From Phyllobates terribilis (lineage: Eukaryota): a DNA stretch of 64,000 bases. Shown piece by piece: positions 27,120 to 61,288 of the stretch (position 1 is its first letter; the number at the start of each line of letters is the position of its first letter). The notes below the pieces were generated by a model. The model was not told the DNA's origin. It saw nothing but the letters and a program-made list of their open reading frames with translations, and made no database searches. The translations under genes and the position numbers were made by a program. The stretch is taken from NCBI RefSeq assembly GCF_046119375.1, contig NW_027362771.1, positions 24,862,001 to 24,926,000 on the forward strand, given 5' to 3'.

Positions 27120-28139
27120 TATATACAGTACAGACCAAAAGTTTTGGACACACCTCATTTAAAGATTTTAATGACTATGAAAATTGTACACTCACACTGA
27201 AGGCATCAAAACTATGAATTAACACATGTGGAATAATATACTTAACAAAAAAGTGTGAAACAACTGAAAATATGTCTTATATTCTAGGTTCTTCAAAGTA
27301 GCCACCTTTTGCTTTGATGACTGCTTTGCACACTCTTGGCATTCTCTTGATGAGCTTCAAGAGGTAGTCACTGGAAATGGTCTTCCAACAATTTGAAGGA
27401 GTTCCCAGAGATGCTTAGCACTTGTTGGCCCTTTTGCCTTCACTCTGCGGTCCAGCTCACCCCAAGCCATCTCGATCGGGTTCAGGTCTGGTGACTGTGG
27501 AGGCTAGGTCATCTGGCGTAGCACCCCATCACTCTCCTTCTTGGTCAAATAGCCCTTACACAACCTGGAGGTGTGTTATGGGTCATTGTCCTGTTGAAAA
27601 ATAAATGATGGTCCAACTAAACGCAAACCGGATGGAATAGCATGCCGCTGCAAGATGCTGTGGTAGCCATGCTGGTTCAGTATGCCTTCAATTTTGAATA
27701 AATCCCCAACAGTGTCACCAGCAAAGCACCCCCACACCATCACACCTCCTCCTCCATGCTTCACGGTGGGAACCAGGCATGTAGAGTCCATCCGTTCACC
27801 TTTTCTGTGTCGCACAAAGACACGGTGGTTGGAACCAAAGATCTCAAATTTAGATTCATCAGACCGAAGCACAGATTTCCACTGGTCTAATGTCCATTCC
27901 TTGTGTTCTTTAGTCAAATTTGGACTCATCAGTAGAGATGAGCATTGTTCGACTCGAACTGTTCGCCAATCTCAAATTCGAGCTGTTTTGGGCGGTGTTC
28001 GAGCCGTTCGGCGAACACGAATGATTTGAAAAAAATTCGGCTGTTCGAGGTTATGTTCGATAACTGTTCGTGCACCAAAATCATAACTGGATTTTTTCTC
28101 AGTAATGATGAAAATTAATGTTAATACACAGTTTGAGTG

Positions 28140-28420
28140 TACAGCGGGGCGGGGGGAGGGGCAGGGGATGGATCTCTGCAGGAATAATGAAGATCTCCAT
28201 TTTTTTTTTCTCTTTCCCGCATTTACAGTGGGGAGGTGCAATCTGTCAGCCTATCAGCAGCGCACACACGGAGCGAAGTGCTTTTTTTCACACAAGCAAG
28301 GGCATGTGTCATTGGCAGTGTATGTCACATGTCCTTGCCCTATAAGATCCAGCCATTTTCCCCGTCGCCACCATTTTCTCACTGCTGCAGCTGCGTGTTA
28401 GGCGGCACCGCTGTTGCTGT
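28140..28420 (+). promoter_or_regulatory. Possible transposase promoter
   Basis: A GC-box-like G tract at 28145-28165, cctataag at about 28339, and two GCCATTTT/CCATTTT (YY1-like) motifs downstream. Motif-based only. Confidence 0.3.
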
Positions 28421-28829
28421 GTGCGCTATACCTTGTTAAGTTCAAGCCAATTTTCGCACAAATCTACAGATAGCTTGGGAGTATGGAACAGTTGTGATTG
28501 CAGTCCTTTTAAGGACTAGGTTACAGCATTTCCTACGACTTTTATCAGGCAGGTCTGTGCTCTTAAATAGATAGGTTGAGGGAGTAAAGACTAATTGTAG
28601 TTGCAGTCCTTTTCAGGACTAAGTTACATCAGTTCCTATCAGTTTGAGCCAGGCAGGTCTGTGCCAGTGCTGTGCAAGTTTTTTCACAGCATTTGGCTGA
28701 ATCTAGCAAAGCTAATCCTTTTTGGCCTATTGCAGAGTGTGTTAGTCAGTGGAGTAGCCTATCTGTGCTGCAAGCTATACCACCTGTGTATAGAATACCA
28801 ATTTTTTTACTGCACCTAGAGAAGTAAAA

Positions 28830-29180
28830 CCTTTTGGGCATAGCATCATTCTATTAGTCCATCTATACTGACCTCCATAAGGTTGCCAACTGAATATAAT
28901 TTTTTTTCTGCATTTACCTCTGAAAAAATATTTGGGCTTCTAGCTGTGTGTGGGAATTGTTCTATTAATCCATCTATACTGACCTCCATCAGGTTGCAAA
29001 TAGAATATAATATTTTTCTGCATCTAGCTCTGAAAAAAATATTTGGCCTTCTTGCAGTGTGTGGGACTTGTTCTATTAGTCCATCTATACTGACCTCCAT
29101 CAGGTTGCAAACTGAATATAATTTTTTTCTGCATCTAGCTCTGAAAAAATATTTGGCCTTCTAGTAGTGTGTGGGACTAA
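28830..29180. repeat. ~112-bp tandem array (about 3 copies) upstream of the transposase; a related array lies at 33020-33290
   Basis: tctattag(t/g)ccatctatact(g/a)a(c/g)ctccat/cca recurs at about 28850, 28962, 29073, 33097 and 33207. Confidence 0.85.
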
Positions 29181-29295
29181 CCCAGACAATAGTTTTGGCC
29201 TAATACCACAGTTTGGCCACTCAGCTCTGCTCGGTTCCCATCCATTGTTTTTTTGTGCAAACAACTCCAGAGTTGTGAATTAGTTAACCACCAAA

Positions 29296-32200
29296 ATGAG
29301 TGGAAAAAGGCCTGCTGCTGGTGGAAAGGGGAATAGGCATGTTGGGAAGTGGAAAAAGGGTTGTGTCCGTGGAGTAGGTGTTAAAGCAACAGTAACATCT
29401 GCAGAAGAAAGACCATCTTCCAGCAAAACTAAAATGTCTGCTTCTTTTAGCGGACAATGTGATAAGATCCCTTTCTTACGGCCACGCCAATCGCTACAAA
29501 TTCCAGATTTTCAACGGATATCAATTGCTCCTTTAAGTGGGCTCAACTCCACATCAACTTCAACATCACAAATACTCCAGTCCTCAGAGGTGTCACCCCA
29601 ATCGCACTTGCTTCCTCACAGCTCCCAAATCTCCAGCTGCCTGTCTGAGTATGAGGTAGAACAGATGGTTGAGTCTGCAGAGCTGTTTACTCATACTATA
29701 GCCTGGGAATCAGAGGTCGGCTCCAGCGCTTCTGTGAATCCAGACGAGGAAATGATCTGCACTGATGCCCAGAATCTTTATGAGTCGGATCCAGGACCAG
29801 ACGCAGAAGGTTCTGACCATAATGTAGACCCTCATTCCCAAACTGTAACTCCTGTTGGTGGAGACAAAGAGGAAGACGATGATGAGACTCAAATACCTGA
29901 TTGGAGCGACAACTTTAGTTTTTTGTCAGGGCAGGAACAGGTTGGCTCTGAGGACGACGGGTGTGATAACGCACAGGGTGATGATGATGAGGTTGGAGAT
30001 CCCACTTACTGTCAACCCACAGTCAGCCAAGAGATGAGGTCAGCAGAGGAGGTGGAGGAGGATGCTAGTGACGACGAGTTCAGGTTGCGCCTTCCTGGAC
30101 AGAGACGTAGTACTGGAAGCACGTCAACAACTGCATCCTCAAACACAACTCTGCCTCTGACCACAAGTCGTGGTGGCTCTTCAGGTCGCATGGGTGCTAA
30201 GCCTTGCATGGCCTGGGCATTTTTTCAGATCGATAAAGATGACCCAACTCGTGTTATCTGTAACATTTGTCAACAAAAGCTAAGTAGAGGCCAAAAAATA
30301 CATAGTTTGAGTACTTCATGCATGAACCGGCACATGGACATGAAGCATAAGTTGCAGTGGGAAGCTCACTGTGCTACAATGCGGCCTAGCCGGCCGGGCC
30401 AACCACCGTCTGCCCCACCTTGTGCATCTGCGGCCTCTTCATCCTCTGTGACTGGGGGGACAGCAGTCACACCTGTTTTGGGGCGCAGACCTGCCACCTC
30501 TTTACCCGCAACAGCCAGCGTGATTGGCAGGTCATCATTTTCTTTGGAGGTGGTAACACCTGCTGGTGTTGAGCGCTGTCCGACATCGATAGCACCACCT
30601 TTGGATCAAGGCAACCTAACATGTCCGCCTGCATCTTCCTCACAGACCGGCAGTTTGCCGGGGACACCCTTATCAACCCCGTCTAAGCACAACAGCCAGC
30701 CCTCAGTCCCTCAGATGTGGACAAGTAAAAGACCATTTCCTCCTAGCCATGAGAAAGCTAAGAGGTTGAATTTCACCATCTGGAAGCTCTTGGCTACAGA
30801 AATGATGCCTTTCCGCCTGGTGGACACAGAGGATTTTCGAGACCTTATGTCCGTCGCAGTGCCCCAGTATCAGATACCCAGTCGGCACTACTTCTCAAAG
30901 AAACGTGTGCCTGTGCTCCACCAGCATGTCGCACACAACAACACCGCTTCTTTGAGAAACTCTGTGTGTGACAGGGTGCATTTCACCACATACACTTGGA
31001 CGAGTAGGCATGGACAGGGGCGTTACATGTCGCTGACTGGGCACTGGGTAACTATGGTGACAGCAGGACAAGGGGCTGCTGTCCAAGTCTTGCCGTCCCC
31101 ACGAGTTGTGCATCAATCCTCTTTATATAGAAGTTCCTCCCCTGCTTCTGCCTCCTCAACCTCCTCTCGGTCCTCCACCTGCACCCAAAGCCTGTCTGGT
31201 CATGCCACAAGCTTTCTAACTGCGCACAAGGGATCCTGCACACCTCCTTACTATGCTCGCAGTAGGGCTCAACGTCATCAGGCAGTTTTTACTTTGAAAT
31301 GTCTGGGAAATGTGAGTCACACAGCTGAGGAGTTGTGGTCAGCTCTGGAGAACCAATTTCATGAATGGTTGTCTCCACTGGACCTGAAACCAGGGAAGGC
31401 CGTGTGCGACAATGCTGCAAACCTGGGTGTGGCCCTTCGCCGGGGCAATGTCACACACGTGCCTTGTATGGCTCACGTGTTAAACCTGGTTGTCCAGCAA
31501 TTTTTAGCCCCATATCCCGGACTAGATGGCCTTCTGCAGAGTGTATGGTCGCTGTGTGTTCACTTCCGCTGTTCGCATCCCGCAGCTCAGCGACTTACAT
31601 CTCTACAGAAGTCGTTGGGCCTGCCACTTCACCGGCTAAAATGCGATGTGCCTACCCGGTGGAAGTCAACTCTGCACATGTTCCAGCGACTGTGGCAGCA
31701 CCGACAAGCCCTGGTGCAATACGTTCTGACGTATAGCCTGGGCCAACGGGATCCAGAGGTGGGGCAAATCACGCTGGAGGAGTGGTCTCAGATCAGGGAC
31801 CTATGCGCCCTTCTGCACAGTTTTGAAATGGCGACGAAGATGTTTAGTGCTGACGATGCCATTATCAGCATGACTATTCCGGTGATTTACATGCTGGAGC
31901 ACATGTTAAACAGAATTCGGAGTCAGGTGGTGGCACAAGAGGAGGTGGAGGAAGTAGAGGAGGAGGAGTTGTATGCGGAAGGGCTAACATCTGCAAGGTC
32001 CAGACGGTCGGCAGCACCAAGGCGGCAGGCATGTGAGGGTGGGGGAGATGGTTTTACCAGGGCGCATGGTAGCAGCCAAACTAGTGAGGAAGGTGCAGGA
32101 GCCCAGGAAGCAGTGGAGGACAAACTGATGGAAGACTCATCAGATGAGGGAGACCATGATCACATTTCTGTTGTGCGAGGTTGGGGGGAGAGGACAGAGG

Positions 32201-32976
32201 AAGGAAGCATGATTGTTACCTCGCCACCAACACAACAGGGACTTGGTGCTCCTGGATGCGCAAGACACATGAGTGCCTTCTTGCTGCACTACCTGCAACA
32301 TGACCCTCGAATTGGAAGAATTAGAAATAATCCTGACTACTGGGTTGCCACACTGTTAGATCCCCGGTACAAAAGTAAATTTGCAGAAATAATTCCTGCC
32401 ATAGAAAGGGATGCACGCATGCAGGAGTATCAGCAGAGACTGTTGCAGAATCTTACATGTGCTCTTCCACAAAACACCAGTGGTGCACGTAGTGAATCTC
32501 ACAGTTCCAACTTGCCAACCGTGGGACCGTTGAGTGTTCAGCACTCAAACCGTAACAGAAACGCAGTGTCTGCTGGTAACATCAATTTTGCGGAATCATT
32601 TCACCACTTTTTTAGCTCATCCTTTGCAAGGCCACAGGAGACAAGAAGTCTGACACATAGTCAACGCCTAGAGACGATGGTACAGGAGTATCTCCAAGTA
32701 AACATTGAAGCCATGACTGTGTCACTGGACCATTGCTCTTTTTGGGCTTCCAATCTGGATAAATGGCCGGAGCTCGCCACTTACGCCTTGGAGATCTTGT
32801 CATGCCCCGCAGCCAGCATTCTGTCTGAACGTGTGTTCAGCGCTGCTGGTGGTGTGCTGACAGATAAGCGCACGCGACTCTCCACTGATAATGTAGACAG
32901 ACTCACGTTCATAAAGATGAACAAATCATGGATCCGAAATGACTTTTCTACCCCTGTGTCATCCTGGGGACAGTAA
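29296..32976 (+). CDS. hAT (Ac/ZBED-like) transposase, 1226 aa, intronless; the first catalytic Asp reads as Tyr
   Basis: BED finger (WAFF...CNIC...RHMDMKH), HFTT[Y]TWTS at the usual TTDxWTS position, VCDNAAN, CMAHVLNL (CxxH), DVPTRWKST, SILSERVFSAAG and a C-terminal dimerisation region. Confidence 0.93.
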   Translation: MSGKRPAAGGKGNRHVGKWKKGCVRGVGVKATVTSAEERPSSSKTKMSASFSGQCDKIPFLRPRQSLQIPDFQRISIAPLSGLNSTSTSTSQILQSSEVSPQSHLLPHSSQISSCLSEYEVEQMVESAELFTHTIAWESEVGSSASVNPDEEMICTDAQNLYESDPGPDAEGSDHNVDPHSQTVTPVGGDKEEDDDETQIPDWSDNFSFLSGQEQVGSEDDGCDNAQGDDDEVGDPTYCQPTVSQEMRSAEEVEEDASDDEFRLRLPGQRRSTGSTSTTASSNTTLPLTTSRGGSSGRMGAKPCMAWAFFQIDKDDPTRVICNICQQKLSRGQKIHSLSTSCMNRHMDMKHKLQWEAHCATMRPSRPGQPPSAPPCASAASSSSVTGGTAVTPVLGRRPATSLPATASVIGRSSFSLEVVTPAGVERCPTSIAPPLDQGNLTCPPASSSQTGSLPGTPLSTPSKHNSQPSVPQMWTSKRPFPPSHEKAKRLNFTIWKLLATEMMPFRLVDTEDFRDLMSVAVPQYQIPSRHYFSKKRVPVLHQHVAHNNTASLRNSVCDRVHFTTYTWTSRHGQGRYMSLTGHWVTMVTAGQGAAVQVLPSPRVVHQSSLYRSSSPASASSTSSRSSTCTQSLSGHATSFLTAHKGSCTPPYYARSRAQRHQAVFTLKCLGNVSHTAEELWSALENQFHEWLSPLDLKPGKAVCDNAANLGVALRRGNVTHVPCMAHVLNLVVQQFLAPYPGLDGLLQSVWSLCVHFRCSHPAAQRLTSLQKSLGLPLHRLKCDVPTRWKSTLHMFQRLWQHRQALVQYVLTYSLGQRDPEVGQITLEEWSQIRDLCALLHSFEMATKMFSADDAIISMTIPVIYMLEHMLNRIRSQVVAQEEVEEVEEEELYAEGLTSARSRRSAAPRRQACEGGGDGFTRAHGSSQTSEEGAGAQEAVEDKLMEDSSDEGDHDHISVVRGWGERTEEGSMIVTSPPTQQGLGAPGCARHMSAFLLHYLQHDPRIGRIRNNPDYWVATLLDPRYKSKFAEIIPAIERDARMQEYQQRLLQNLTCALPQNTSGARSESHSSNLPTVGPLSVQHSNRNRNAVSAGNINFAESFHHFFSSSFARPQETRSLTHSQRLETMVQEYLQVNIEAMTVSLDHCSFWASNLDKWPELATYALEILSCPAASILSERVFSAAGGVLTDKRTRLSTDNVDRLTFIKMNKSWIRNDFSTPVSSWGQ

Positions 32977-33299
32977 AAGCTTGATGATTGGTTAAAATCA
33001 CCTCACCAACCGTTTTAAGCTTTCAAATTACTAATCATGTTTATCTGTATCTTGGCTGGAAAATAATTTGGGCTTTTTAGCAGTGTGCAGTACTGAGTCT
33101 ATTAGGCCATCTATACTAAGCTCCACCAGATTAAAAATTACTAATCATGTTTATCTGTATCTTGGCTGGAAAATAGTTTGGGCTTTGTAGCAGTGTGCAG
33201 TACTGTTTCTATTAGGCCATCTATACTAAGCTCCACCAGATTTAAAATTAATAATAATTTTTAGCTGCATCTAGCCCGGAAAATAATTTTGGGGCTCCG

Positions 33300-34850
33300 A
33301 GATGCGCAAGACACATAAGTGCCTTCTTGCTGCACTACCTGCAACATGACCCTCAGATTGTCAGAATTCGAAGTAATCCTGACTACTGAGTTGCCACACT
33401 CTTAGATCCCCCACACTCTTCGATCAACCTTTTCTTTTTAATAAAGACCAAAAAAATGGTCATTTTTGAAATTGTAAGCATTAGCAGGTTATTAGAAACT
33501 GAAATCAAACAGTTTTCAACTCAAAACTTTATTCTAGGTGATGTTACATTTGCACATAGGATCCCTTGTTCGAAAGGAGCTTCTGAACTCTCTCGTCCAT
33601 TGAATTTGTCAGGTTTTGGATGGTTTCTGCTTTAATTGTTTTGCATGAGGACAGAATACCCTCCCAGAGCTGTTGCTTAGATGTGAACTGCCTCCCGCCA
33701 TCATAGACACTCCTTTTGATGATACTCCAGAGGTTCTGAATGGGGTAGAGGTCAGGGGAGCATGGGGGTAACACCATAAGTTTGTCCCTTTTATGCCCAT
33801 ATCAGACAGAGATGCAGATGTGTTATGTGCAGCATGAGACGGTGCATTATCATGCATGAAAATGATCTTGCTGTGGAATACACGGTTCTTTTTCTTGAAA
33901 CATGGCAGGAAGTGCTGTTTGAGAAACTCCACATACATTATGGAGTTCATCTTTACCCCTTCAGGGATCCTAAAGGGGCTGACAATCTCTCTCCCCATGA
34001 TTCCAGCCCAAAACATTACTCCACCTACTCCTTGTTGGCGCTGTAGCCGTGTTTGCGTGAGGTGTCCATCAACCAGCCATCCTCCACTCCATCCATCTGG
34101 ACCATCGAGCGCTGCACGGCACTCATCCGTGAACAAAACAGTTTTGAAATTAGTCTTCATGTAATGTTTGGCCCACTGGAGCCGTTTCTGCTTGTGTGCA
34201 GTGGATAGAGGAGGTCGACAGGATGGCGTACGCACAGCTGCAAACCTCTGAAGGACCCTGCATCTTGTTGTTCGGGGGACGTTGGAGGCACCAGCAGCTT
34301 CAAAAACTTGTCTGCTGCTATGACAAGGCGTTTTTGCCGCTGCTCTTTTAACCTGACGTAATTGCCTGTAGGAAAGAGTCCTCAATTTGCCCTTATCAGC
34401 ACGCAGTGTACTGTGAATCAGCTACATACTTCTTGATTGCCAATACACTTCATCCTGATCATCGCACAATGTTGATTGTAGTCATGCCTTGACCTAAACA
34501 CTCCACAATTTGTTGCTTCTCAGCAGCCGACACATCCTTTTTCTTTCCCATTTTGGCAGAAAATGTAGGCTGCTTAATAATGTGGGACAGCCTTCTTAAG
34601 TAGTCTTGCCGTTCATTGGACACACCTGCCAAACTAATTAGCACAGGTGTCTGCAAATGCTTACAGTGATATAAAGCGCCCTGACACACATCACCATCAA
34701 TGAGTTTAACTGACAAACAAACAAATTCTTCCCTTATCACTCCTAAACACTTTTTGCATAATAATTTGGAACACAGTGTACATGTGCTTTTCCACAAAAC
34801 ACCAGTGGTTCACGTAGTGAATCTTACAGTTCTAACTTGCCAACCGTGGT
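33300..34850 (+). pseudogene. Partial duplicate of the hAT transposase 3' coding region (33300-33410 is similar to 32254-32365; 34779-34850 is similar to 32456-32525), split by a Tc1-like insertion
   Basis: Direct similarity, e.g. gatgcgcaagacacat(a/g)agtgccttcttgctgcactacctgcaacatgaccctc. Confidence 0.8.
33421..34778 (-). mobile_element. Tc1-like element of DD37E (TRT) type, missing one TIR
   Basis: TIR CACTGTGTTCCAAATTATTATGCA at 34778 next to TA; motifs FTDECR and FMHDNAPSH. After correcting one frameshift there are 37 residues from the second D to the E position, which now reads Q (PDLYPIQNLW). Confidence 0.8.
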
Positions 34851-34854
34851 CTGT

Positions 34855-36590
34855 ATGGAGTTGTTCAATAAAGGGCCCAAAATTAAGATAACATAGATGG
34901 GAGAGGTCTCTATGAATAGGAATTCCTAAGAATTTGATACCCTGTGAGGGCCAGGCAAAGGGAAAGTTGAATTGGATGGAATACTGTATGGATTTGGGGA
35001 GGGAGACATCGAGGGCCTCAGACTTCGCTGTATTGATTTTAAAATTTGACCATGTAACAAAGTGATCTATTTCAGCCCTAACAGCCTGCTGATGGATATA
35101 TGTGATTGACATCATCAGCAAATGCAGAGCACTTGTACTCGGTGCCTCCCACCTCAATCCACATAATATTGGGGTTATGGCGAATTGATGAGAGCAGGTG
35201 CTCTGTCACTAGGATGTATAAGAGAGGGGACAGAGGACATCCCTGCCTTGTCCCATTGGTGATTATGAAAGGTGATGAAAATGTTCTGACGCGCCCCCTG
35301 GGCCTTGGGACATCCGGAGCCAGACCCTTTTTGGTGGATGCTGGTGGGTGTAGTCTCTGTGGTGGCGACCCGGTTCCGTGGCTCAGGGCGGTCAAACCAG
35401 TGGCGGAACTATTTATGTGGTTTTGATGTTTAAATGTCCGACTACGCCACCCGTGGATTGCGGTCAGAGTGAACCTCCGCTGCAAGGCAGACCGCTGAGG
35501 CTGGTGTTGTGGGTGCAGCAGATCGTAGCATAACTACCCACGGGAGGAGTATAGCCTCAGGGCAGTGTATGCGGAGGATAGGTTTTATGGTGCAGGGCAG
35601 CAGCAGTAACGATACGGAGTCAGTGATGCAGTCCAGGGCCTTTACTCACAGTTCTTATTATCCAGACCACTTCTGCAGGTAACGGCTGCCCACGTCGTAC
35701 TGTGCTCACCAGGTGAGGGGCTCAGACAACTCCCAGATAACTTTGGAGCGCTTCACAGGACCCCCTTTGTGTGTCCTTTGTCTGGCCTTTCTTACCAACC
35801 CTTCTGTCCGGCTGCCTCGGGCCTCCTCTTGGTAAACTTGGCGCCAGTTTCCCTGACCCTATGTGCTGCCCTCCTAGCGGGTGTAGCGAGGGGCTGCGCC
35901 ACATAAAATGTCACAGCCTCCGGTTTCTAGCTGAGGGTCGTTTCCCGCCTCCGCTAGTTTCGGGGACCGGTCTCCCCCTTTGGCCTGACCCCTCCATGCT
36001 GGTGGATTCGGGCGTGCGGTGGCAACTCGCCCATCCAAACCCCTGGGATCCCTTCGTTCCTCGTTCCTGGAGCCTTCTCCGCTCCTCTTCCTTCCTTCTC
36101 CCTCTTCCAGGCCTGGGCCTCTGTTACTAGGCCCGCCTCTGGAGCATAGCTCATGCAGAGCCCCTGCTCCCTGTCACTTCTGCTCAGACTTCTCTGCACT
36201 GAACTAAGATGGTTCCCACCTTTTATACTCCCTTCTCAATGCACCCAGGAACTGCTTCCTCCCTGCTCCTGCACTGCAGGGTTCCCCTTCCTCAGTGTTC
36301 CCTCCCCCCACTCCAGCCAGGGACAGGGACTGTCGTGCCCATCTCAGGGGCATATTGGTCGCCCTGCCCCACGGCAATGTGGTGTAATGCATGCAGGTGT
36401 CGGGGTCCTGATCCACACTCCATCCTTACCTAAGAGTGAGATATCACACCTCTGGGTGAGGTGCAATACCTTTGCAGCAACCGAGCCCTCGGGGTGCTAC
36501 AGTTCCATTTATCTTCAGACTAGGTGACGTAATGCGATACAGGGCCGTGATTTTGGCTACAAAAGGGTCCCCTAGACCCCTACCCCAAGC
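34855..36590 (-). pseudogene. L1-clade LINE reverse transcriptase fragment, interrupted by a solo LTR
   Basis: Removing 35287-36501 gives ...[28 protein letters not shown]...SAFADD, followed by SNFKINTAKSEAL and IKFLGI. Confidence 0.85.
35287..36501. mobile_element. Solo LTR (1215 bp), Gypsy-type
   Basis: TG...CA termini and a perfect 4-bp TSD GTTC. Excision restores the L1 reading frame. Confidence 0.88.
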
Positions 36591-38595
36591 TTTTTAAGAG
36601 AATAATATATGGCGTGCAAGGAGACTCTATGGAATGCTTTCTCAGCATCCAACGAGAGTATCTAATTACAAATTTTTAACTGCATCTAGCCCAGGAAATA
36701 CTTTGTGCCTAGTAGCAGTGTCTGCTAGTCAGCGGATTATCCCGGCTGTTAAGCAAGCTACACCACCTGTAGTTTGGACACTTAATTTTTTCAAAGGAAA
36801 TGCTTCGGGACCACGGGATACTCAGTGAAGAGCATCAGGAGGCACCCCAAGGCATAGGGGCTGGGACTGGCGGTAGGATGCCTTGCGGTGGACAGCCGAG
36901 CTCGATCGTTATAAAAGCTTTTTAACTGCAGCAGCTTTAGTGGACGCTACTGGAGCTGGAATTGCGCGGCTGCTGGCATGAGACTTGCCCTTCAATAGAT
37001 CCTTGTAAAAGGATTTAAAGTGTATTCATTCAAATTGGAGAGACAATTTAAATTAAAAAGCTTAGAGCTGCCTCCACCACAGGGGGGCTCGCTCGATCCA
37101 ACAGCGGACAGGCACCAGTATTGGGAGAGGGGGGCTGGCCGTCAGGGTCCACCGCGGCTCTGGCACAAACGGAGGTGGCACGGGCAGGAACGGACTGGCC
37201 GTGTCGGCTTCTCACTTTTTGGATTTTAGAAGGGCATGACATGCCTATATCTGTGTCTCCCCCTCCTTTTACTCCTCCACCTCTTTTCTTTTCGCATGAC
37301 TATATGTACTTGTCACTTTTCCATGTGTTAGTTATGTCTTCAGAGCAGTTTGTCAGCTTTTGGACACCTTTGAAGGTGTTTTCTATGTGTTTCTATGTGT
37401 TTTTGTTTGCCTGCCATTGGTTTTAATGGTGTTCGAAGGTGTTCGACGAACAGTTCGACGAACAGTTCGGCGAACACAAGGGTGTTCGATGAACCGAACC
37501 GAACTCGAACACTACGGGGGTGGCTCAACACTACTCATCAGACCAAAGCACAGATTTCCACTGGTCTAATGTCCATTCCTCGTGTTCTTTAGCCCAAACA
37601 AGTCTCTTCTGCTTGTTGCCTGTCCTTAGGAGTGGTTTCCTAGCAGCTATTTTACCATGAAGGCCTGCTGCACAAAGTCTCCTCTTAACAGTTGTTGAAG
37701 AGATGTGTCTGCTGCTAGAACTCTGTGTGGCATTGACCTGGTCTCTAATCTGAGCTGTTGTTAACCTGCGATTTCTGAGGCTGGTGACTCGGATAAACTT
37801 ATCCTCAGAAGCAGATGTGACTCTTTGTCTTCCTTTCCTGGGGCGGTCCTCATGTGAGCCAGTTTCTTTATAGCGCTTGATGGTTTTTGCAACTGCACTT
37901 GGGGACACTTTCAAAGTTTTCCCAATTTTTCGGACTGACTGACCTTCATTTCTTAAAGTAATGATAGCCACTCGTTTTTCTTTACTTAGCTGCTTTTTTC
38001 TTGCCATAATACAAATTCTAACAGTCTATTCAGTAGGACTATCAGCTGTGTATCCACCAGACATCTGCACAACACAATTGATGGTCCCAACCCCATTTAT
38101 AAGGCAAGAAATCCCACTTATTAAACCTGACAGGGCACACCTGTGAAGTGAAAACCATTTCCGGTGACTACCTCTTGAAGCTCATCAAGAGAATGCCAAA
38201 AGTGTGCAAAGCAGTCATCAAAGCAAAAGGTGGCTACTTTGAAGAACCTAGAATATAAGACATATTTTCAGTTGTTTCACACTTTTTTGTTAAGTATATA
38301 ATTCCACAGGTGTTAATTCATAGTTTTGACGCCTTCAGTGTGAATGTACAATTTTCATAGTCATGAAAATACAGAAAAATCTTTAAATGAGAAGGTGTGT
38401 CCAAACTTTTTGGTCTGTACTGTATATGCAATATTTTTATATTTATACTTACCTTGAGAGATATTTATTCTTTGACTGTATGTATAGTGTAGGCTTTTTT
38501 ATGTGGTATATGGCTTTTATCAGTGCTGGATTTTCCTACTTGTTTTATTATGTTATATAAATTTGTTCACTTCATAAATCATATTTATGACTATT

Positions 38596-48730: not shown

Positions 48731-51700
48731 TGTGGAGAGCGGTGGAAGTGACATGCCCAGGGGAATGGGGACGACTCGTCGCCCGGGCCTTGTTGTTACC
48801 TGACCTTGGGGGATGTCGCGGTGGTCGGCTCCCTGGCCCGTACCCTGGGGTCACTCTTAAAAGAAAGGGGGGAAGTTATATGGGATAGGGAATATTCGTG
48901 ATGCCACCCGTGGGGTCTGGTGAGGATCACCAGCCCTGCAACAGTCCTCTCAGGCCGGTGTTCAGGCAGCTTAGTTGGTGCGGCTCCCCGCAGGTGGAGC
49001 GGGGCCTCAGGGCAGAGTAGGAGAAGGGATGCAGGACAGAGGGGACCCAGCCGGGTCAGAGGAAGAATGGTCACACACACAACAGTTCACTTCAGTACCT
49101 TTACTGTTGGTGTTTCTTGCACAGTCCAGGGTACTTCAGGGTGAAGGGTGCATATCAGGACTCTCCCCAGTGAGTGGGTGTGGGGCCTCCTGTTCCTTGC
49201 CTTTCCTTGATAAGTTTCTGACCTGCCAGGAGCTAGGCCTAACTTGGTCTCTGTCTTGCACCTGCTGACCTGGTGGTAGGGCTTTCTGTTGGAGGTCACA
49301 CTCCCTGGTCTCTGGGGCCTCCGTGACTCCTGACCCTGCTATGTAATCAGCTTTTGGTGTTCCTGGGACATATAATTCACCAGGGGTTCCGGTTGTTTCT
49401 GCTGGGTGTAAGGAATCCCTGCAGACGCGGACCTGGTGTCTGGTATATGTTCTTGGGGTGAGAGGGTAAAGCTCCTCTGCCCCCTTTTGTTACTCTCTTT
49501 CCACTCGCCTTCGGCCACGCTCGGGGCCTCACTAGGCTTCACACGGGCAGTAGGCCTCGCTACTCTTCACCGCTCTTTTGGCGTCGGCACTAGTGTTGAG
49601 CCACCCCCGTAGTGTTCGGGTTCGGTTCGGTTCGTCGAACACCAGGATGTTCGAGGAACTGTTCGTTGAACTGTTCGTCGAACACCTTAGAACACCGTCG
49701 AACACCGTTAAAACCAATGGCAGGCAAACAAAAACACATAGAAACACATAGAAAACACCTGCAAAGGTGTCCAAAAGCTGACAAACTGCTCAGAAGACGC
49801 TTTCTTTAAAAAAGCCGGTCGGCAATTCAGCAGCGGCATACACCGGTACCCGACAATTTAGACAAGAAGGAATAGAGCTTCACACATAGATTAGATAGAT
49901 AGAAACATGTCAGTCACATATATATGAAGTACAGTGACAGTGTTGCTTACTGTACTTGTCATTTAGTGTAAAGGATTTATTAAAAAATATAATAGTGTTT
50001 TCATGCACCGTCTCTTTAAAAAAGCCGGCAGGCAATTCAGCAGCGGTACCCAACAATTTATAACAGACAGAATAGAGAATCACACATAGATTAGATAGAT
50101 AGAAACATGTCAGTCACATATATATGAAGTACAGTGACAATGTTGTTTACTGTACTTGTCATTTAGTGTAAAGGATTTATTAAAAAAAATAATAGTGTTT
50201 TCATGCACCGTCTCTTTAAAAAAGCCGGCCGGCAATTCAGCATCTGTACCCGACAATTTATAACAGACAGAATAGAGCTTCACACATAGATTAGATAGAT
50301 AGAAACATGTCAGTCACATATATAATAAGTACAGTGATAGTGTTGGTTACTGTACTTGTCATTTAGTATTAAAATAAAGGATTTATTATTAAAAAAAATT
50401 GGCGTGGTGTTCCCCGTAACTTTAGTCTCTAGCGGAGGTTAAGCAGACGGCTGGGGCAAATGTTTGAAGTCTGGGAAGGGGGTAATACCCACGGAGCTTC
50501 CCAGGCTACTAATATGAGCCCCCAGCTGAATACATAGCCTTTACTAGCTATTAAAATGGGGGACCCCCCCAAAAAATGACGTGGGGTCCCCCCTAATTTA
50601 ATAGCTAGCAAAGGCTAGGCAGACAGCTGGGGGCTGATATTAATAGCCCAGGAAGGGAGCCATGAATATTGGCCCCCTCCCAGGCTAGAAACACCAGCCG
50701 TCAGCCGCCCCAGAAATGGCGCATTCATAGGATGCGCCAATTCTGGCACTTAGCCTCGCTCTTCCACGCTGCCCTGGTGCGGTGGCAGTGGGGTAATAGG
50801 GCTGGGGTTGATGTCAGCTTATAATGCCAGCTGACATCAAGCCCAGGTTAGTAATGGAGAGGCGTCTATAAGACACCCCCATTACTAACCCCATAGTCAA
50901 AGTTAAAAGAAAACACAAACACCCAGAATAAATTCCTTTAATTGAAATAAACACACAATCCTTTATTGTTCTAAATTAAACCATACTTACCGTCACGCCC
51001 ATTCCAGCTGAAGCCAACGATCTCCTGCAATAAAAGAAAAATAATAAAGCAACATCATCCTTACCTTTCCATGGTTCCCAGGACAGCTTCAGCTCTGCTA
51101 CATCGAGATGACAGGCTGGACCGCAGCAGAACGCTGCCATCCAGCCTATCATCCCGCAGACACTGAGAAGCGCAGGCTTGCTTGCGCTCTGCAGTGTCTG
51201 GCTGTGACGTCATAAAGATGAGACGAGTTCATGTCCAATGAACTCGGCGCACCTCATGCACGTCACTGACAGCGTGGGAAAATTCTCACGCTGAAGCGCT
51301 GAGTGCAGGAGAATTCTCCCACGCTGTCAGTGACGTGCATAAGGTGAGCTCATGTCCAATGAACTCAGCTCACCTCCTGCACGTCACTTACAGCGTGGGA
51401 GAATTCTCCTGCACTCAGCGCTTCAGCGTGAGAATTCTCCCACGCTGAAGCGCTGAGTGCAGGAGAATTTTCCCACGCTGTCAGTGACGTGCATGAGGTG
51501 AGCCGAGTTCATTGGACATTAACTCGGCTCATCTGGATGCCCTCACAGAGAGACACTGTGGAGCGCAAGCAAGCCTGCGCTTCTCAGTGTCTGCGGGATG
51601 ACAGGCTGGATGGCAGCGTTCTGCTGCGGTCCAGCCTGTCATCTCGATGTAGCAGAGCTGAAGCTGTCATGGGAACCATGGAAAGGTAAGGATGATGTTG

Positions 51701-54700
51701 CTTTATTATTTTTCTTTTATTTCAGGAGATCGTTGGCTTTAGCAGGAATGGGCGTGACGGTAAGTATGGTTTAATTTAGAACAATAAAGAATTGTGTGTT
51801 TATTTCAATTAAAGGACTTTTTTCTGGGTGTTGTGTTTTTTTTAAATACTTTACTAGAAATTCATGGTGGTCATGTCTAATATTGGCGTGACCCCATGAA
51901 TTTTGGGCTTAGGGCCAGCTGATAATGCCAAGCTGGCCCTAACCCCTTTATTACCCAGTGAGCCACCGCATCAGGGCCCTGGATGAGTTGGGTACAGCGC
52001 CAGAAGATGGCGCTTCTATGAACGCGCCATTTTCCGGGGTGGCTGCGGACTGCAATTTGCAGCGGGGGTGGCCCAGAAAGCTTGGGCCTCCCTGCGCTGC
52101 GGATTCCAGCCCCCAGCTGTCTAGTTGTACCTGGCTGGACACAAAAACAGGGCGAAGCCCCACGTCAATTTTCTTTAAATTATTTCATGAAATAATTAAG
52201 AAAAAAAGGGCTTCCCTATATTGATGTGTCCGGCCAGGTACAAATAGGCAGCTGGTGGTTGGGGGCAGCCCGCTCCTGCCTGCTGCACCTGACTGGACAC
52301 AAATATAGTGCGAAGCCCCACGTCAATTTTTTTTTAATTATTTCATGAATTTCCTGAAATAATTTAAAAAAATTGAAGTGGGGCTTCGCACTATATTTGT
52401 GTCCAGCCAGGTACAGCAGGCAGGAACGGGCTGCCCCCAACCACCAGCTGACTATTTGTACCTGGCCGGACACAACAATATAGGGAAGGCCTTTTTTTCT
52501 TAATTATTTCATGAATTTCATGAAATAATTAAAAAAAAAATACGTGGGGCTTCGCACTATATTTGTGTCCAGCCAGGTACAACTAGGCAGCTGGGGGCTG
52601 GAATCTGCAGCGCAGGGAGGCCCAAGCTTTCTGGGCCCCCCCCGCTGCAAATTGCAGTCCGCAGCCACCCCGGAAAATGGCGCGTTCATAGAAGCGCCAT
52701 CTTCTGGCGCTGTACCCAACTCATCCAGGGCCCTGGTGCGGTGGCTCACTGGGTAATAAAGGGGTTAGGGCCAGCTTGGTATTATCAGCTGGCCCCAAGC
52801 CCAAAATTCATGGGGTCACGCCAGTATTAGACATGACCGCCATGAATTTCTAGTAAAGTATTTAAAAAAAACACAACACCCAGAATAAAGTCCTTTAATT
52901 GAAATAAACACACAATTCTTTATTGTTCTAAATTAAACTATACTTACCATCACGCCCATTCCAGCTGAAGCCAACGATCTCCTGCAATAAAAGAAAAATA
53001 ATAAACCAACCTCATCCTTACCTTTCCATGGTTCCCACGACAGCTTCAGCTCTGCTACATCGAGATGACAGGCTGGACCGCAGCAGAACGCCGCCATCCA
53101 GCCTGTCATCCCGCAGACACTGAGAAGAGCAGGCTTGCTTGCGCTCCACAGTGTCTCTCTGTGACGGCATCCAGATGAGCCGAGGTCATGTCCAATGAAC
53201 TCGGCTCACCTCATGCACGTCACTGACAGCGTGGGAAAATTCTCACGCTGAAGTGCTGAGTACAGGAGAATTCTCCCACGCTGTCAGTGACGTGCATGAG
53301 GTGAGCTCATGTCCAATGAACTCAGCTCACCTCATGCACCTCACTGACAGCGTGGGAAAATTCTCCTGCACTCAGCGCTTCAGCGTGAGAATTCTCCCAC
53401 GCTGTAAGTGACGTGCATGAGGTGAGCCGAGTTCGTTGGACATGACCTCGGCTCATCTTTATGCCGTCACAGAGAGACAATGTGGAGCGCAAGCATGCCT
53501 GCTCTTCTCAGTGTCTGCGGGATGACAGGCTGGATGGCGGCGTTCTGCTGCGGTCCAGCCTGTCATCTTGATGTAGCAGAGCTGAAGCTGTCGTGGGAAC
53601 CATGGAAAGGTAAGGATGAGGTTGCTTTATTATTTTATTTTTATTACAGGAGATCGTTGGCTTCAGCTAGAATGGGCATGACGGTAAGTATGGTTTAATT
53701 TAGAACAATAAAGGAATGTGTCTTTATTTCAATTAAAGGACTTTATTCTGGGTGTTTGTGTTTTTTTTAACTTTGACTATGGGGTTAGTAATGGGGGTGT
53801 CTTATAGACGCCTCTCCATTACTAACCTGGGCTTGATGTCAGCTGGCATTATAAGCTGACATCAACCCCAACCCTATTACCCCACTGCCACCGCTACAGG
53901 GCAGTGGGAAGAGCGAGGCTAAGTGCCAGAATTGGCGCATCCTATGAATGCGCCATTTCTGGGGCGGCTGACGGCTGGTGTTTCTAGCCTGGGAGGGGGC
54001 CAATATTCATGGCTCCCTTCCTGGGCTATTAATATCAGCCCCCAGCTGTCTGCCTAGCCTTTGCTAGCTATTAAATTAGGGGGGACCCCACGTCATTTTT
54101 TTGTTGGAGTCCCCCATTTTAATAGCTAGTAAAGGCTATGTATTCAGCTGGGGGCTGATATTAGTAGCCTGGGAAGCTCCGTGGGTATTACCCCCTTCCC
54201 AGGCTTCAAACATCTGCCCCAGCTGTCTGCTTAACCTCCGCTAGAGCCTAAAATTAAGAGGAACCCCACGCCAATTTTTTTAATAATAAATCCTTTATTT
54301 TAATACTAAATGACAAGTACAGTAACCAACACTATCACTGTACTTCATATATATGTGACTGACATGTTTCTATCTATCTAATCTATGTGTGAAGCTCTAT
54401 TCTGTCTGTTATAAATTGTCGGGTACAGATGCTGAATTGCCGGCCGGCTTTCTTAAAGAGACGGTGCATGAAAACACTATTATTTTTTTTAATAAATCCT
54501 TTACACTAAATGACAAGTACAGTAAGCAACACTGTCACTGTACTTCATATATATGTGACTGACATGTTTCTATCTATCTAATCTATGTGTGATTCTCTAT
54601 TCCTTCTATTCTAAATTGTTGGGTACAGATGCTGAATTGCCGGCCGGCTTTTTTAAAGAGACGGTGCATGAAAACACTATTATTTTTTTTGATAAATCCT

Positions 54701-57700
54701 TTACGCTAAATGACAAGTACAGTAAGCAGCACTTTCACTGTACTTCGTATATATGTGGCTGACATGTTTATATCTATCTAATCTATGTGTGAAGCTCTAT
54801 TCTTTCGGTTCTAAATTGTCGGGTACCGGTGAATGCCGCTGCTGAATTGCCGGCTTTTCATGTTTCACTGTTGGCACTGTTCCCATCGATTTGGGCAATC
54901 ACTGTAATGCCACAACCACCATGGCTGTGGCATTACAGTGAGTGGCAGACAATCCCTGCATGATTGGTGCTCTAAATAGCGCCAGACATGCAGGACACGC
55001 TTTTGGTGCACGAACAGTTATCGAACATAACCTCGAACAGCCGAATTTTTTGCAAATCGTTCGGGTTCGTCGAACAACTCGAACACCGCCCAAAACAGCT
55101 CGAATTTGAGATTGGCGAACAGTTCTAGTCGAACACCGCTCATCTCTAGTCGGCACGCCCTAGGCTCACTAACTCCAGCTCTCTGAGTCTGGACTGAACT
55201 GACTGAGCTCCACTGCAGGCTAGCTTCTGCAGGAGCTCCTCTCAACAGGCTGACCTTCTCACAGACTGTAGACTCCAGACTGACTGCCTAACTCCACCCT
55301 CCAGTATATATATCCCTATCCAATCTCCCTCTGGTGGTCTGAGGAGGTAGGGTGGAGGTGTGTGAATGGTATGAGGGCCTCTTGTGGAGAAGTCCGTCCA
55401 TGCACCCCTCTTGGATCTGTGGCACCAATGCGCAGCAGGGCGCCACATTCCCCCCTAGCAAAGCTCAGTACTCCCGGACTGAAGTAATTTTTACAACAGG
55501 TAACAACAATAACTGTTCCCTTTATGGGAGGCACTTTGCTTGAACGTTGCATAATAAAACATTATAAATAATAAATATATACATACATACAATAAGCAAC
55601 CTCAGAATTTAAATCTGTTCCGGTGAGGTCCCCTGACAGAGTGTCCATCTCACGGGTAAAGTACAAGGTAGCTTGAGGGACCTGTCCAAAGCAAACCCTC
55701 AACGTAGGCCCTGGGGTGGCTGCAGGGCATGGCGATCCTGAGTTGGACCTCCACTTCGGCCACGCCACACAGGTTTTTGTTCTGAGGTCACATAAAGGGG
55801 CACTCCAGGGAGTGAAATTATTTACAGCAAACAGATTTTGGGCTGCACACAGTCCTCAGCCACAAAGTTCTTTATGTACCCTTACGGTTAACTAGAGATA
55901 ACAAGGGAAGTGTCCATATCACTTAAATTGTCCATTAGTAAGGCAAAGCACATATCAAGATATACATACATGAAAAATACACAAGACAATACCCCAGGAG
56001 CAACTATCTACACTGTCAGAGTTTCCTTCTCTATTCTCTGTATCTGACAGGGGTCTGACCTCGTGTGCTACGTGTCAACCTGCGTGGTACTGGGATTCGT
56101 GAGGCACTAGTGTTTGCACTACCTCCCATTCTGTCAGTTCTAAGTGTTGGGGAACTGCAGGGTTGCCTTAACCTCTCTACAGGACTGGCAAGTATACCAT
56201 TGGCTGGGCCTTCTTGCTCTGCTCCAACCGGGATCCTTCTTCCGGGTATTCTTCTTGAGCCGGCTCTTCTGAAGCACTTACAGGTTCTACTTGCTGTGGA
56301 GGGTCTTCTAGCTGTTCAAAGAAGTGGATCACAGGTATTATTACTGCTCCTCCTAGTTGAGGCCAATCTGCCGGGAAATCTCCTAAGTCAGTATGGAGTA
56401 CTGCTTCTTTAGGCTCCTCTGGTACGGTGAGAGGCACTTCTTCTTGGGGCTTTAGCATGTCTGGACACAACTTCAGATGGTCTCTAGATACCGTTGCAGT
56501 CGTTATTCCTCCGTCTTTGCTAATCAAACAGGTCTTCTTGTTATCAAATCTTGAATTTAACACAGTGTAGGGTTCTCTCTTCCACTGGTCATCAAGTTTG
56601 TGGTTTCTCCTTTTCCTCTTTAACACCACTTCTCCTGGTGTGAAGGGTTCTGCGGGCGCACATTTATTGTAGTGGGCTTCCTGCTTGTCCCTTACCCGAG
56701 TGAGACTGTCTTCGACACAGGCCTGTACTCTTCTGTACTGCTCCTGTCTGCTCCTGTCTGGTCGTGTCCCAGTCCTCAGTGGACATATCTGCTTCTGGTT
56801 CTACTACACCAAGCTCCAGGTCTATGGGCAACTTCCCGGTTCTTGCTCGCATGAGATATGCTGGAGTACATTGGTGGAACTCACAGGTATGTAGTTGTAC
56901 AAATCTACCAGGTCAGGTAGTAGGTCTGGCCACTGATTTCCATCCTCTAGTGGTAAGGTCTTCAGCAGATCGATGACGATGTTATTCATCTTTTCACAGA
57001 TACCGTTAGTTTGGGGATGGTACGGTGTAGTCCGGATCTTTTTACACCCGAAAAGATGGCAGAACTCTTTGAACAGTTCGGCTCCAAAGGCTGGGCCTTG
57101 ATCCATCAGCACCTGCTCCGGGTATCCATGGGTCCTGCAGAAGTACGCCTGAAACGTCCTCGCTGCTGTCTCTGCCGTCAGATCCTTGACGGGGGCGACC
57201 ACGAGGAACCGGGAGTAGTGATCCACCATGGTCAGGGCATAGGAATATCCTGACCTGCTGGGTGACAGCTTGACATGATCCAGGGCCACGATCTCCAAGG
57301 GACAAGTCGTCTTGATGGGTTGCAGGGGTGCCTTCTGGCTGCTGTAGTCTTTTCTTCTGAGACTACAGGGTCCACAATTCAGGCACCACCTCTCAATGGA
57401 ACTGCGCATTCCTACCCAATAAAACCGACACTTCAGCAGGGTTTCTAGCTTCTTTCAGCCAAAGTGCCCCGCCTGATCGTGGTAGGCATCCAACACCATC
57501 TGGATGTCTGTCTTGGGCACCACTATCTGCCATACCATCTCATGGGTTTTGGGGTTGACTTACCTCCGGCACAGCTTCTCTCTATAGATGAACAGCCGCA
57601 TCTTCTCATTCCACAGCTGCTTGGCTTGTAGAGACGCGTTCTTCTCCAGGGAGGAACCTTCTTGAGTTATCAGCTCTTTGATACGGCTGACAACCGGGTC

Positions 57701-60700: not shown

Positions 60701-61288
60701 TTCACACTCCCTGGTCTCTGGGGCCTCCGGGACTCCTGACCCTGCTAAGTAATCAGCTTTTGGTGTTCCTGGGACATATAGTTCGCCAGGGGTTCCGGTT
60801 GTTTCTGCTGGGTGTAAGGAATCCCTGCAGACGCGGACCCGGTGTCCGGTATATGTTCTTGGGGTGAGCGGGGAAAGCTCCTCTGCTCCCTTTTGTTACT
60901 CTCTTTCCACTCGCCTTTGGCCACGCTTGGGGCCCTCACTAGGCTTCACACGGCCAGTAGGCCTTGCTACTCTTCACCCCCCTTTTGGCATCAGCACGCC
61001 CTAGGCTCACTAACTCGAGCTCTCTGAGTCTGGACTGAACTGACTGAGCTCCACTGCAGGCTAGCTTCTGCAGGAGCTCCTCTCAACAGGCTGACCTTCT
61101 CACAGACTGTAGACTCCCGACTGACTGCCTAACTCCACCCTCCAGTATATATATTCCTATCCGGGCTCCCTCTGGTGGTCTGAGGTGGTAGGGTGGAGGT
61201 GTGTGAATGCGATGAGGGTCTCTTGTGGAGAAGTCTGTCCATGCACCATACTGGGATCTGTGGTACCAGTGCGCAGCAGGGCGCCACA
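48731..61288 (-). mobile_element. Gypsy LTR retrotransposon (PR-RT-RH-INT) with most of gag deleted; 3' LTR ~48731-49590 plus 55157-55447, truncated 5' LTR ~60347-61288
   Basis: LTR start TGTGGCGCCC on the minus strand at 55447 and 61288, and PPT taggggggaa. CCHC knuckle CHRCHKTGHAVQSC, PR LLDTGSQV, RT YLDD (58276-59082), RNase H, and INT (56822-57409). No TSD found, so the left boundary is less certain. Confidence 0.88.
49591..55148. mobile_element. Non-autonomous hAT element (copy 2, 5.56 kb) with a giant nested-palindrome interior
   Basis: Same termini as 3431-9293; perfect 8-bp TSD GTCGGCAC. The empty site is visible in the sister LTR at about 60990. Confidence 0.95.

What the first reader, a model, noticed from the sequence alone, without database searches (positions are those of the whole stretch)
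49591..55148. The two palindromic hAT copies are inversion isomers (flip-flop interior)
Seen: the termini have the same orientation in both copies, but arm-specific variants have swapped sides. The ALV-type arm is on the left in copy 1 (5743-5955) and on the right in copy 2 (52544-52756); the ALM-type arm shows the reverse. The segment at 6976-7176 (minus) reappears with an identical translation at 51489-51689 (plus). The gcaagcatgcc variant (~5358 and ~53489) needs a second, local flip or conversion. The central unit has 3 copies in copy 1 and 2 in copy 2. Inference: recombination between arms repeatedly inverts and homogenises the interior, as in organellar or herpesvirus inverted repeats.
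Basis: partly seen in the sequence, partly recalled or inferred. Interest (0 to 1): 0.7.

Follow-up and report, generated by a model that had tools for sequence, protein, structure and literature searches.

The report
Palindromic frog hAT copies, interior inverted
Two separately inserted copies of a protein-less hAT transposon in a poison-frog genome have the same ends, but at least 2 kb of their palindromic inside points opposite ways; this is a clean example of the known way inverted repeats flip the DNA between them, not a new mechanism.

Summary
Copy 1 (3431-9293, TSD TTTATAAG) and copy 2 (49591-55148, TSD GTCGGCAC) are independent 8-bp-TSD insertions with their ends in the same orientation.

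A four-arm alignment gives three blocks:
- Unique termini plus the first ~250 nt of each arm keep their sides in both copies: 128 'direct' sites.
- A ~1-kb tract (copy 1: 4107-5104 and 7540-8540) has no informative sites. Copy 1's two arms differ by only 0.9% there; copy 2's differ by 4.8%.
- The interior (copy 1: 5141-7503; copy 2: 51316-53358) has 36 substitutions and 3 indels that swapped sides, against 0-1 that did not (Fisher p about 6e-7). Both hairpin loops are reverse-complemented.

One inversion, with the exchange inside the ~1-kb tract, explains everything. Arm-to-arm exchange is real, but 'repeatedly' is not shown: one event suffices. The inner arms are not homogenised: they are 4.8% apart, older than the split between the copies (1.2-2.5%). 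The 'second local flip' rests on a single base.

The isomer ratio could not be measured, because the only public data served were ~80-nt contigs. The process is the well-known flipping of DNA between inverted repeats. This scan had already met the transposon family elsewhere in this genome.

The parts
3431..9293 (+). Copy 1 of the non-autonomous palindromic hAT element (5863 bp), isomer with alpha-type inner arm on the left
   Evidence: TSD TTTATAAG at 3423-3430 and 9294-9301; termini TAGTGTTGAGC / GCTCATCTCTA; self-palindrome
49591..55148 (+). Copy 2 of the same element (5558 bp), isomer with alpha-type inner arm on the right
   Evidence: TSD GTCGGCAC at 49583-49590 and 55149-55156; paralogous empty site
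3431..3895 (+). Copy 1 left unique terminus (3431-3648) plus first part of the 200-bp subterminal repeats: keeps the same side in both copies (partners 8753-9293, 49591-50064, 54608-55148)
   Evidence: 118 + 10 'direct' informative sites versus 2 flip sites
4107..5104 (+). Copy 1 left half of the homogenised arm tract, the interval in which the exchange must lie
   Evidence: Only 9 L1-R1 mismatches (0.9%), against 9% just outside and 5% or more inside; copy 2 arms have 48 mismatches (4.8%) in the same stretch
7540..8540 (-). Copy 1 right half of the homogenised arm tract (mirror of 4107-5104)
   Evidence: Same alignment columns as above
5141..7503 (.). Minimal inverted block in copy 1 (s1 loop region, inner X', centre M with 166-nt units, inner X, expanded s2)
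   Evidence: 36 flip substitutions + 3 flip indels; 97-98% identity to the reverse complement of 51316-53358
51316..53358 (.). Minimal inverted block in copy 2
   Evidence: As above; 51489-51689(+) is identical to 6976-7176(-)
5176..5191 (+). Asymmetric loop of the left sub-hairpin of copy 1. The same + strand sequence is at 7453-7468. Copy 2 has the reverse complement at 51351-51366 and 53308-53323.
5909..6338 (.). Central tandem 166-nt units: 2.6 copies in copy 1, one unit fewer in copy 2 (around 52107-52600)
27933..37533 (-). Autonomous hAT partner with the same termini. TSD CTCATCAG. ORF 29296-32976(+) of 1226 aa with zf-BED and the hAT dimerisation domain.
60797..61197 (+). Paralogous empty site of the repeat that copy 2 inserted into

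Best explanation
Both stretches are independent cut-and-paste insertions of one high-copy, protein-less hAT element. A BED-finger hAT transposase element with the same ends, also present in this window, would mobilise it in trans. The cargo is a 5.3-kb nested palindrome with the layout A - X s X' - M - X s X' - A'.

On the lineage joining the two copies, one reciprocal exchange took place between the left and right arms. It lay inside a ~1-kb outer-arm tract (copy 1: 4107-5104 and 7540-8540). It inverted everything between the exchange points: at least 2.36 kb and at most about 4.85 kb. The transposase-binding ends and the first ~250 nt of each arm were left untouched.

The most likely mechanism is homologous recombination between the inverted arms within one chromatid (intrachromatid NAHR). 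The near-identity of copy 1's two arms across exactly this tract would be the associated conversion tract. That would place the event in copy 1 or in its source element.

The inversion has no effect on mobility or coding, so both isomers persist as neutral variants.

Shown: the inversion, the block structure and the arm-to-arm homogenised tract. Inferred: NAHR as the mechanism, the link between the tract and the crossover, and which lineage carries the event.
For: - Perfect, different 8-bp TSDs and identical end orientation, plus an empty paralogous site for copy 2.
- An autonomous partner with zf-BED and Dimer_Tnp_hAT that shares only the termini.
- Three successive tree shapes along the arm. 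They are ((L1,L2),(R1,R2)) up to 3895, ((L1,R1),L2,R2) in 4107-5104, and ((L1,R2),(R1,L2)) from 5141 to the centre.
- The count is 36 flip substitutions and 3 flip indels against 0-1 direct sites, p = 6e-7.
- Both sub-hairpin loops are reverse-complemented together.
- Module distances follow the flip pairing: X1c-X2b 3 differences and X1b-X2c 12. X1a-X1d differ at 6 sites and share derived bases.
- NAHR within one chromatid between palindrome arms is the established cause of spacer inversion. About 50% of primate X palindromes differ in spacer orientation between species (PMC8327919).
Against: - Only two copies were available. The direction, timing and number of events are therefore unknown, as is whether the event happened at this locus or in a source element.
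- The homogenised tract necessarily hides the breakpoints, so its link to the crossover is parsimonious but not proven. An unrelated crossover would fall in it with a chance of about 0.4.
- Distances between the two copies differ between arm types (alpha1-alpha2 24/963 versus beta1-beta2 11/955) and between sides (the left outer arms are more diverged than the right). This hints at a more mosaic history than one event.
- No raw long reads were available to confirm the assembly at either locus.
Confidence: 0.6

Rival explanations
1. Template switching made the isomer, not crossing-over. A nascent strand copying the outer arm dissociated and re-annealed to the other, nearly identical arm, so the interior was copied in reverse. 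This could happen during synthesis-dependent repair of the gap left by hAT excision, or at a stalled replication fork.
For: hAT elements excise and leave gaps that are repaired from a sister copy (general knowledge). The exchange interval is a 99%-identical stretch of the arms. The interior also shows copy-number changes of 154-nt and 166-nt units, which are typical of slippage. Earlier scan notes report that other copies of the family have interiors re-assembled from the same modules (untested).
Against: It needs two coordinated switches, one in each arm. It does not by itself predict that copy 1's two arms became identical over 1 kb. No junction signature can be seen, because the exchange lies in identical sequence.
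Confidence: 0.2
2. A break inside the palindrome was repaired from another family member paired in the inverted register. This is possible because each arm matches both arms of any other copy. The interior would then be imported, not flipped.
For: The family is present in very high copy number. Segments of the two copies have unequal divergence: left outer arms 2-6% versus right outer arms 0-2.3%, and alpha 2.5% versus beta 1.15%. That is what a mosaic of donors would give.
Against: It needs a long tract of at least 2.4 kb that ends symmetrically in both arms. The homogenised tract in copy 1 is intra-copy. There is no direct evidence for a third donor.
Confidence: 0.1
3. Assembly or polishing artefact: the interior of one copy was mis-oriented, or arm variants were mis-assigned.
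For: Long palindromes in very high-copy repeats are hard to assemble, and no raw reads could be laid to check this.
Against: The swap is a coherent block. It includes structural characters (loop orientation, 33-nt and 8-nt indels, and the expanded s2 side), with a 201-nt stretch identical in reverse complement. The element is short enough to be spanned by ordinary long reads. Polishing errors would pull the sequence towards the family consensus and would not mirror it.
Confidence: 0.04
4. One reading: ongoing, frequent flip-flop with homogenisation, as in plastid or herpesvirus inverted repeats.
For: Arm-to-arm conversion patches occur at two nested levels. An earlier scan note reports a similar ~1-kb tract in three other copies (s1-217963).
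Against: The inner arms stay 4.8% diverged, which is older than the split between the copies. There are only 5 copy-specific shared sites against 40 flip sites. A single event explains the data, and no evidence exists for two isomers at one locus.
Confidence: 0.06

Closest known systems
Spacer inversion in large sex-chromosome palindromes by intrachromatid NAHR (primate X/Y palindromes; PMC8327919)
   Same: Two long inverted arms, a reciprocal exchange inside the arms that inverts what lies between, arm-to-arm gene-conversion tracts, and rearrangements concentrated near the centre of symmetry.
   Different: Here the palindrome is only 5.3 kb, nearly spacer-free, non-coding and carried inside a mobile element present in very many copies. 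The inner arms are about 5% diverged instead of more than 99% identical.
Flip-flop inversion isomers of plastid genomes (PMC7145664) and herpesvirus or yeast 2-micron inverted repeats
   Same: Geometry: inverted repeats with the intervening segment found in two orientations.
   Different: Those isomers coexist at about equal amounts inside one cell, and their repeats are kept identical. The 2-micron plasmid uses a dedicated recombinase. None of this is shown here, and no recombinase is encoded.
Foldback-like DNA transposons (Drosophila FB; Galileo of the P superfamily, PMC4168063, PMC2775673)
   Same: DNA transposons dominated by long internal or terminal inverted repeats built of sub-repeats, structurally variable between copies and prone to recombination.
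   Different: This element has short hAT ends (11-nt TIR, 8-bp TSD) with distinct unique left and right subterminal regions. The palindrome is cargo, not the TIR. The paper searches found no report of isomer pairs with fixed ends for those families.
Non-autonomous hAT elements (Ds-type deletion derivatives and MITE-like hAT-N families)
   Same: 8-bp TSD, ends that start TAG.G, subterminal GTTCGA/CGAAC motifs, no transposase, and termini shared with an autonomous BED-hAT element.
   Different: The cargo is unrelated to the autonomous interior and is a nested 5.3-kb palindrome.

Membership tests
hAT superfamily, non-autonomous member | 8-bp target-site duplication | tested here: met
   TTTATAAG and GTCGGCAC flank the two copies; CTCATCAG flanks the autonomous relative. 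An empty paralogous site carries one copy of the target.
hAT superfamily, non-autonomous member | Short imperfect TIRs of the hAT type (5'-YARNG) | tested here: met
   The ends read TAGTGTTGAGC and TAGAGATGAGC. The pattern TAGNGNTGAGC has 7 matches in the window against 0.45 expected, and 6 of them lie at element ends.
hAT superfamily, non-autonomous member | Termini shared with an element that encodes a hAT transposase | tested here: met
   The element at 27933-37533 shares 148 nt (94%) and 209 nt (85%) of the two ends. Its 1226-aa ORF has zf-BED (E 3.8e-10) and Dimer_Tnp_hAT (E 2.8e-13). The catalytic core was not examined separately.
hAT superfamily, non-autonomous member | No transposase of its own | tested here: met
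   Only chance ORFs of 116 aa or less, none with a Pfam match. No Rfam family matched.
Inversion isomers produced by recombination between inverted repeats | The same flanking or terminal sequences with the internal segment in opposite orientation, and breakpoints inside the inverted repeats | tested here: met
   Direct block up to 3895, flip block from 5141, and exchange interval inside the arms.
Flip-flop equilibrium systems (plastid IR, herpesvirus, 2-micron) | Both isomers coexist at one locus or molecule population within an individual | not testable with these tools
   All 24 listed runs are kept as Logan contigs, and the four that were laid gave pieces of about 80 nt, which cannot phase 1.2 kb.
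Flip-flop equilibrium systems (plastid IR, herpesvirus, 2-micron) | The inverted repeats are kept (near-)identical by continual conversion | tested here: not met
   Inner arms are 4.8% apart excluding the loop (5.8% with it) in both copies. Only a 1-kb tract in copy 1 is homogenised.
Flip-flop equilibrium systems (plastid IR, herpesvirus, 2-micron) | A dedicated site-specific recombinase (2-micron type only) | tested here: not met
   No coding capacity in the element.

The most novel reading that the evidence does not exclude
The family is in a true flip-flop regime. Inversion between the arms would recur so often, in the germline or even the soma, that interior orientation is close to 50:50 across the very many copies and largely uncoupled from copy phylogeny. 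The family would then be a genome-wide natural reporter of intrachromatid recombination, and of crossover versus conversion tract lengths, at long palindromes in a vertebrate.
Probability: 0.25. Interest if true: 0.55.

Novelty: new member of a known kind. Interest (0 to 1): 0.35.

Why it matters
The finding shows that a long palindrome carried by a transposon is recombinationally active in a vertebrate germline. The ends needed for mobility stay intact, so one family can exist as structural isomers.

The family is very abundant and each copy has its own flanks. A census of orientation, crossover points and conversion tracts over all copies would measure how often inverted repeats a few kb long flip and convert in a frog genome. 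That rate is otherwise known mostly from a handful of sex-chromosome palindromes.

There is also a practical point. Repeat libraries and aligners that assume one consensus will mis-score half of such a family.

Tried and rejected
- Reads. The look-up of sequencing runs returned 24 runs, all kept as Logan contigs. Read laying on 49370-55369 with four runs gave only pieces of about 60-350 nt that fit both arms. It therefore gave no phasing of termini to interior, no test for isomers at one locus and no isomer ratio.
- More copies. One metagenome scan with a 25-nt motif invariant in all eight X modules found 0 matches. Inside the window only the two copies and the termini of the autonomous element match. 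The second metagenome scan and the bacterial/archaeal genome collection were not tried, as frog DNA is not expected there.
- Coding or RNA content of the cargo. There are no Pfam hits for the five longest ORFs and no Rfam family. 'ALV' and 'ALM' are chance ORFs, useful only as markers.
- Second local flip (the GCAAGCATGCC variant). Rejected as unnecessary. It is one T>A site shared by X1b and X2d, and about 1.2 coincidences are expected by chance. A flip that includes the loop is excluded by the loop orientation. A short X2c-to-X2d conversion patch (shared derived bases at X alignment columns 232 and 268) plus one further change also fits.
- Scattered homoplasy. Rejected (p about 6e-7).
- Inversion of the 46-kb stretch between the two copies by inter-copy crossover. 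Rejected, because each copy keeps one left end, one right end and matched TSDs.
- Literature. Searches for transposon 'inversion isomers' or internal inversion between transposon repeats returned only haloarchaeal genome papers or nothing. The Galileo paper held none of the searched phrases about internal inversion or gene conversion.
Full report
**What is there**

The window is repeat-rich eukaryotic DNA (45.8% GC, no N). Earlier notes of this scan say it comes from a poison frog.

Two stretches share one architecture: 3431-9293 and 49591-55148. Each is bounded by a perfect 8-bp target-site duplication:
- TTTATAAG at 3423-3430 and 9294-9301;
- GTCGGCAC at 49583-49590 and 55149-55156.

Both have the same left end (TAGTGTTGAGCC...) and the same right end (...CGCTCATCTCTA) in the same orientation.

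For copy 2 the window also holds a paralogous empty site. Its two flanks, joined through a single copy of the target, align colinearly at 95% over 401 nt with 60797-61197.

A third element at 27933-37533 (TSD CTCATCAG) shares only the termini: 148 nt at 94% and 209 nt at 85%. It encodes a 1226-aa protein with a BED zinc finger and the hAT C-terminal dimerisation domain.

The two copies have only chance ORFs, without Pfam or Rfam matches. They are therefore independent insertions of a non-autonomous hAT element whose autonomous partner is a neighbour in the window.

Laid contigs show that the family is extremely abundant in three samples of the same organism from two studies, and faintly present in a second organism.

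**Anatomy**

Copy 1 is laid out as follows:
- unique left terminus, 3431-3648;
- 2.6 units of a 200-bp repeat;
- outer arm A;
- module X, 4729-5112;
- loop region s1, 5113-5254;
- X', 5255-5637;
- centre M, 5638-6819, with 166-nt units;
- X, 6820-7202;
- s2, 7203-7531, expanded by 154-nt units;
- X', 7532-7915;
- A' and its 200-bp repeats;
- unique right terminus, 9000-9293.

Copy 2 has the same plan. Its centre of symmetry is at 52353/52354, and it has one 166-nt unit fewer.

**Test of the claim**

I aligned the four arms: L1, the reverse complement of R1, L2 and the reverse complement of R2. Each parsimony-informative column was then classed by which arms share the variant:
- 'direct': L1=L2 and R1=R2;
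- 'flip': L1=R2 and R1=L2;
- 'copy': L1=R1 and L2=R2.

The result is strictly block-wise.

1. Arm positions 3431-3895 hold 128 direct, 2 flip and 1 copy site. This block covers the unique termini and the first ~250 nt of the palindrome.
2. From 4107 to 5104, copy 1's two arms differ at only 9 positions (0.9%). They differ by 9% just outside this tract and by 5% or more just inside it. Copy 2's arms differ at 48 positions (4.8%) over the same stretch. The stretch holds almost no informative sites: 1 flip, 4 copy, and 1 direct site at 5105 on its border.
3. From 5141 to the centre there are 36 flip substitutions and no direct site, apart from one at 6134 in the ambiguously aligned central units. 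Three indels are also flip-type: 33 nt shared by R1 and L2, 8 nt shared by L1 and R2, and 1 nt shared by R1 and L2.

Ten of the flip substitutions are a single character, the asymmetric loop of the sub-hairpins. On the + strand both loops of copy 1 read GAGCTGAGTTCATTGGACATGAGCTC, and both loops of copy 2 read its reverse complement.

With that cluster collapsed to one character, the contrast of outer (10 direct, 2 flip) against inner (1 direct, 28 flip) still gives Fisher p = 6e-7.

Independent pairwise comparisons agree:
- the interior matches at 97-98% in reverse complement and at 90-94% in direct orientation;
- 6976-7176(-) is identical to 51489-51689(+) over 201 nt;
- among the eight X modules, the flip partners are nearest neighbours (X1c-X2b 3 differences, X1b-X2c 12).

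Scattered homoplasy is excluded. The inverted block is at least 5141-7503 in copy 1 (51316-53358 in copy 2) and at most 3896-8752 (50065-54607 in copy 2).

**What the data say about the process**

The inner block has the tree ((L1,R2),(R1,L2)). Within-type distances are 2.5% and 1.15%. The between-type distance is 4.8%, or 5.8% with the loop. The two arm types are therefore older than the split of the two copies, and they have not been homogenised since.

Arm-to-arm exchange is nevertheless real:
- Copy 1 has a sharply bounded ~1-kb tract of near-identity between its arms.
- Its outer X modules share derived bases absent from the six other X modules.
- Copy 2's outer X modules share a derived AA dinucleotide.
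- X2c and X2d, the two arms of one sub-hairpin, share two derived bases.

The transition from direct to flip is hidden exactly within copy 1's homogenised tract. The simplest reading is a single intrachromatid crossover between the arms with an attached conversion tract, in copy 1 or in its source element. This is an inference. An unrelated crossover would fall in that tract with a chance of about 0.4.

An earlier follow-up in this scan (s1-217963) reported a similar ~1-kb tract of arm-matching variants in three other copies of the family. It also attributed the tract to arm-to-arm recombination in source lineages. My result agrees, and I tested it only on these two copies.

The eight X modules carry 53 minimum changes over 385 columns, so about 1.2 identical coincidences are expected by chance. 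A local flip that includes the loop is ruled out by the loop orientation.

Nothing in the two copies requires more than one inversion.

**Mechanism and rivals**

Recombination within one chromatid between palindrome arms is the textbook cause of spacer inversion. In primate X palindromes about half of the spacers differ in orientation between species (PMC8327919). Plastid genomes show the same geometry as coexisting isomers (PMC7145664).

The rivals are:
- Template switching during repair of the excision gap, or at a replication fork. The slippage-type changes of the 154-nt and 166-nt units make this plausible, but it needs two coordinated switches.
- Repair from another family member paired in the inverted register. 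The unequal divergence of different segments hints at a mosaic history.
- An assembly artefact. This is unlikely, because structural characters, indels and substitutions all flip coherently.

None of these could be separated with two copies.

**What could not be done**

All 24 listed public runs are kept as Logan contigs, and the four I laid gave pieces of about 80 nt that fit both arms. I could therefore test neither the isomer ratio nor the presence of both orientations at one locus. One metagenome scan for more copies found nothing.

No N stretch was involved.

**Verdict**

The process is known. The setting adds modest novelty: a very high-copy mobile palindrome whose ends stay fixed while its inside can flip. 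The scan had already met the family itself elsewhere in this genome.

Noticed in passing
window 27933-37533: Apparently intact autonomous hAT (9.6 kb, TSD CTCATCAG) with a 1226-aa BED + hAT-dimerisation ORF at 29296-32976(+). It has the same termini as the palindromic elements. A 258-aa ORF with a Tc1/mariner look (not scanned against Pfam) lies at 33609-34385(-), so the element may hold a nested insertion.
   Followed up: partly
joint 55148 -> 49591 (table 5c): In two samples from different studies (runs X1 and X3), contigs join the right end of the element to the left end with exactly 8 letters (CTTATGAG) between. This suggests a head-to-tail pair of elements sharing one 8-bp target somewhere in the genome, or, less likely, joined ends of an excised element. 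An earlier scan note (s1-224807) describes a tail-to-tail double insertion into one target.
   Followed up: no
window 9291-10274 (-) and 37531-38007 (-): ORFs that look like Tc1/mariner-type transposase directly abut the right end of copy 1 and the end of the autonomous hAT. The hAT elements sit in a dense patchwork of older DNA transposons.
   Followed up: no
X modules, alignment columns 286-312 (e.g. 5014-5040, 51189-51215, 53459-53485): A ~30-nt hypervariable patch where nearly every X module differs by several bases, while the two outer X modules of each copy share copy-specific derived bases. It may be a mutation or short-tract conversion hotspot.
   Followed up: partly
window 1582-1592 (-): A further hAT-type end (TAGTGATGAGC) that matches the family's TIR pattern, probably from a related element. 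It was not examined.
   Followed up: no
window 3431-3648 vs 49591-49817 and 9000-9293 vs 54855-55148: The right unique termini of the two copies are identical (0 differences in 245 nt). The left termini differ at 4 of 218 positions plus a 10-nt indel, and the adjacent left repeats are 6% apart against 2.3% on the right. The two sides of the element have unequal histories.
   Followed up: partly
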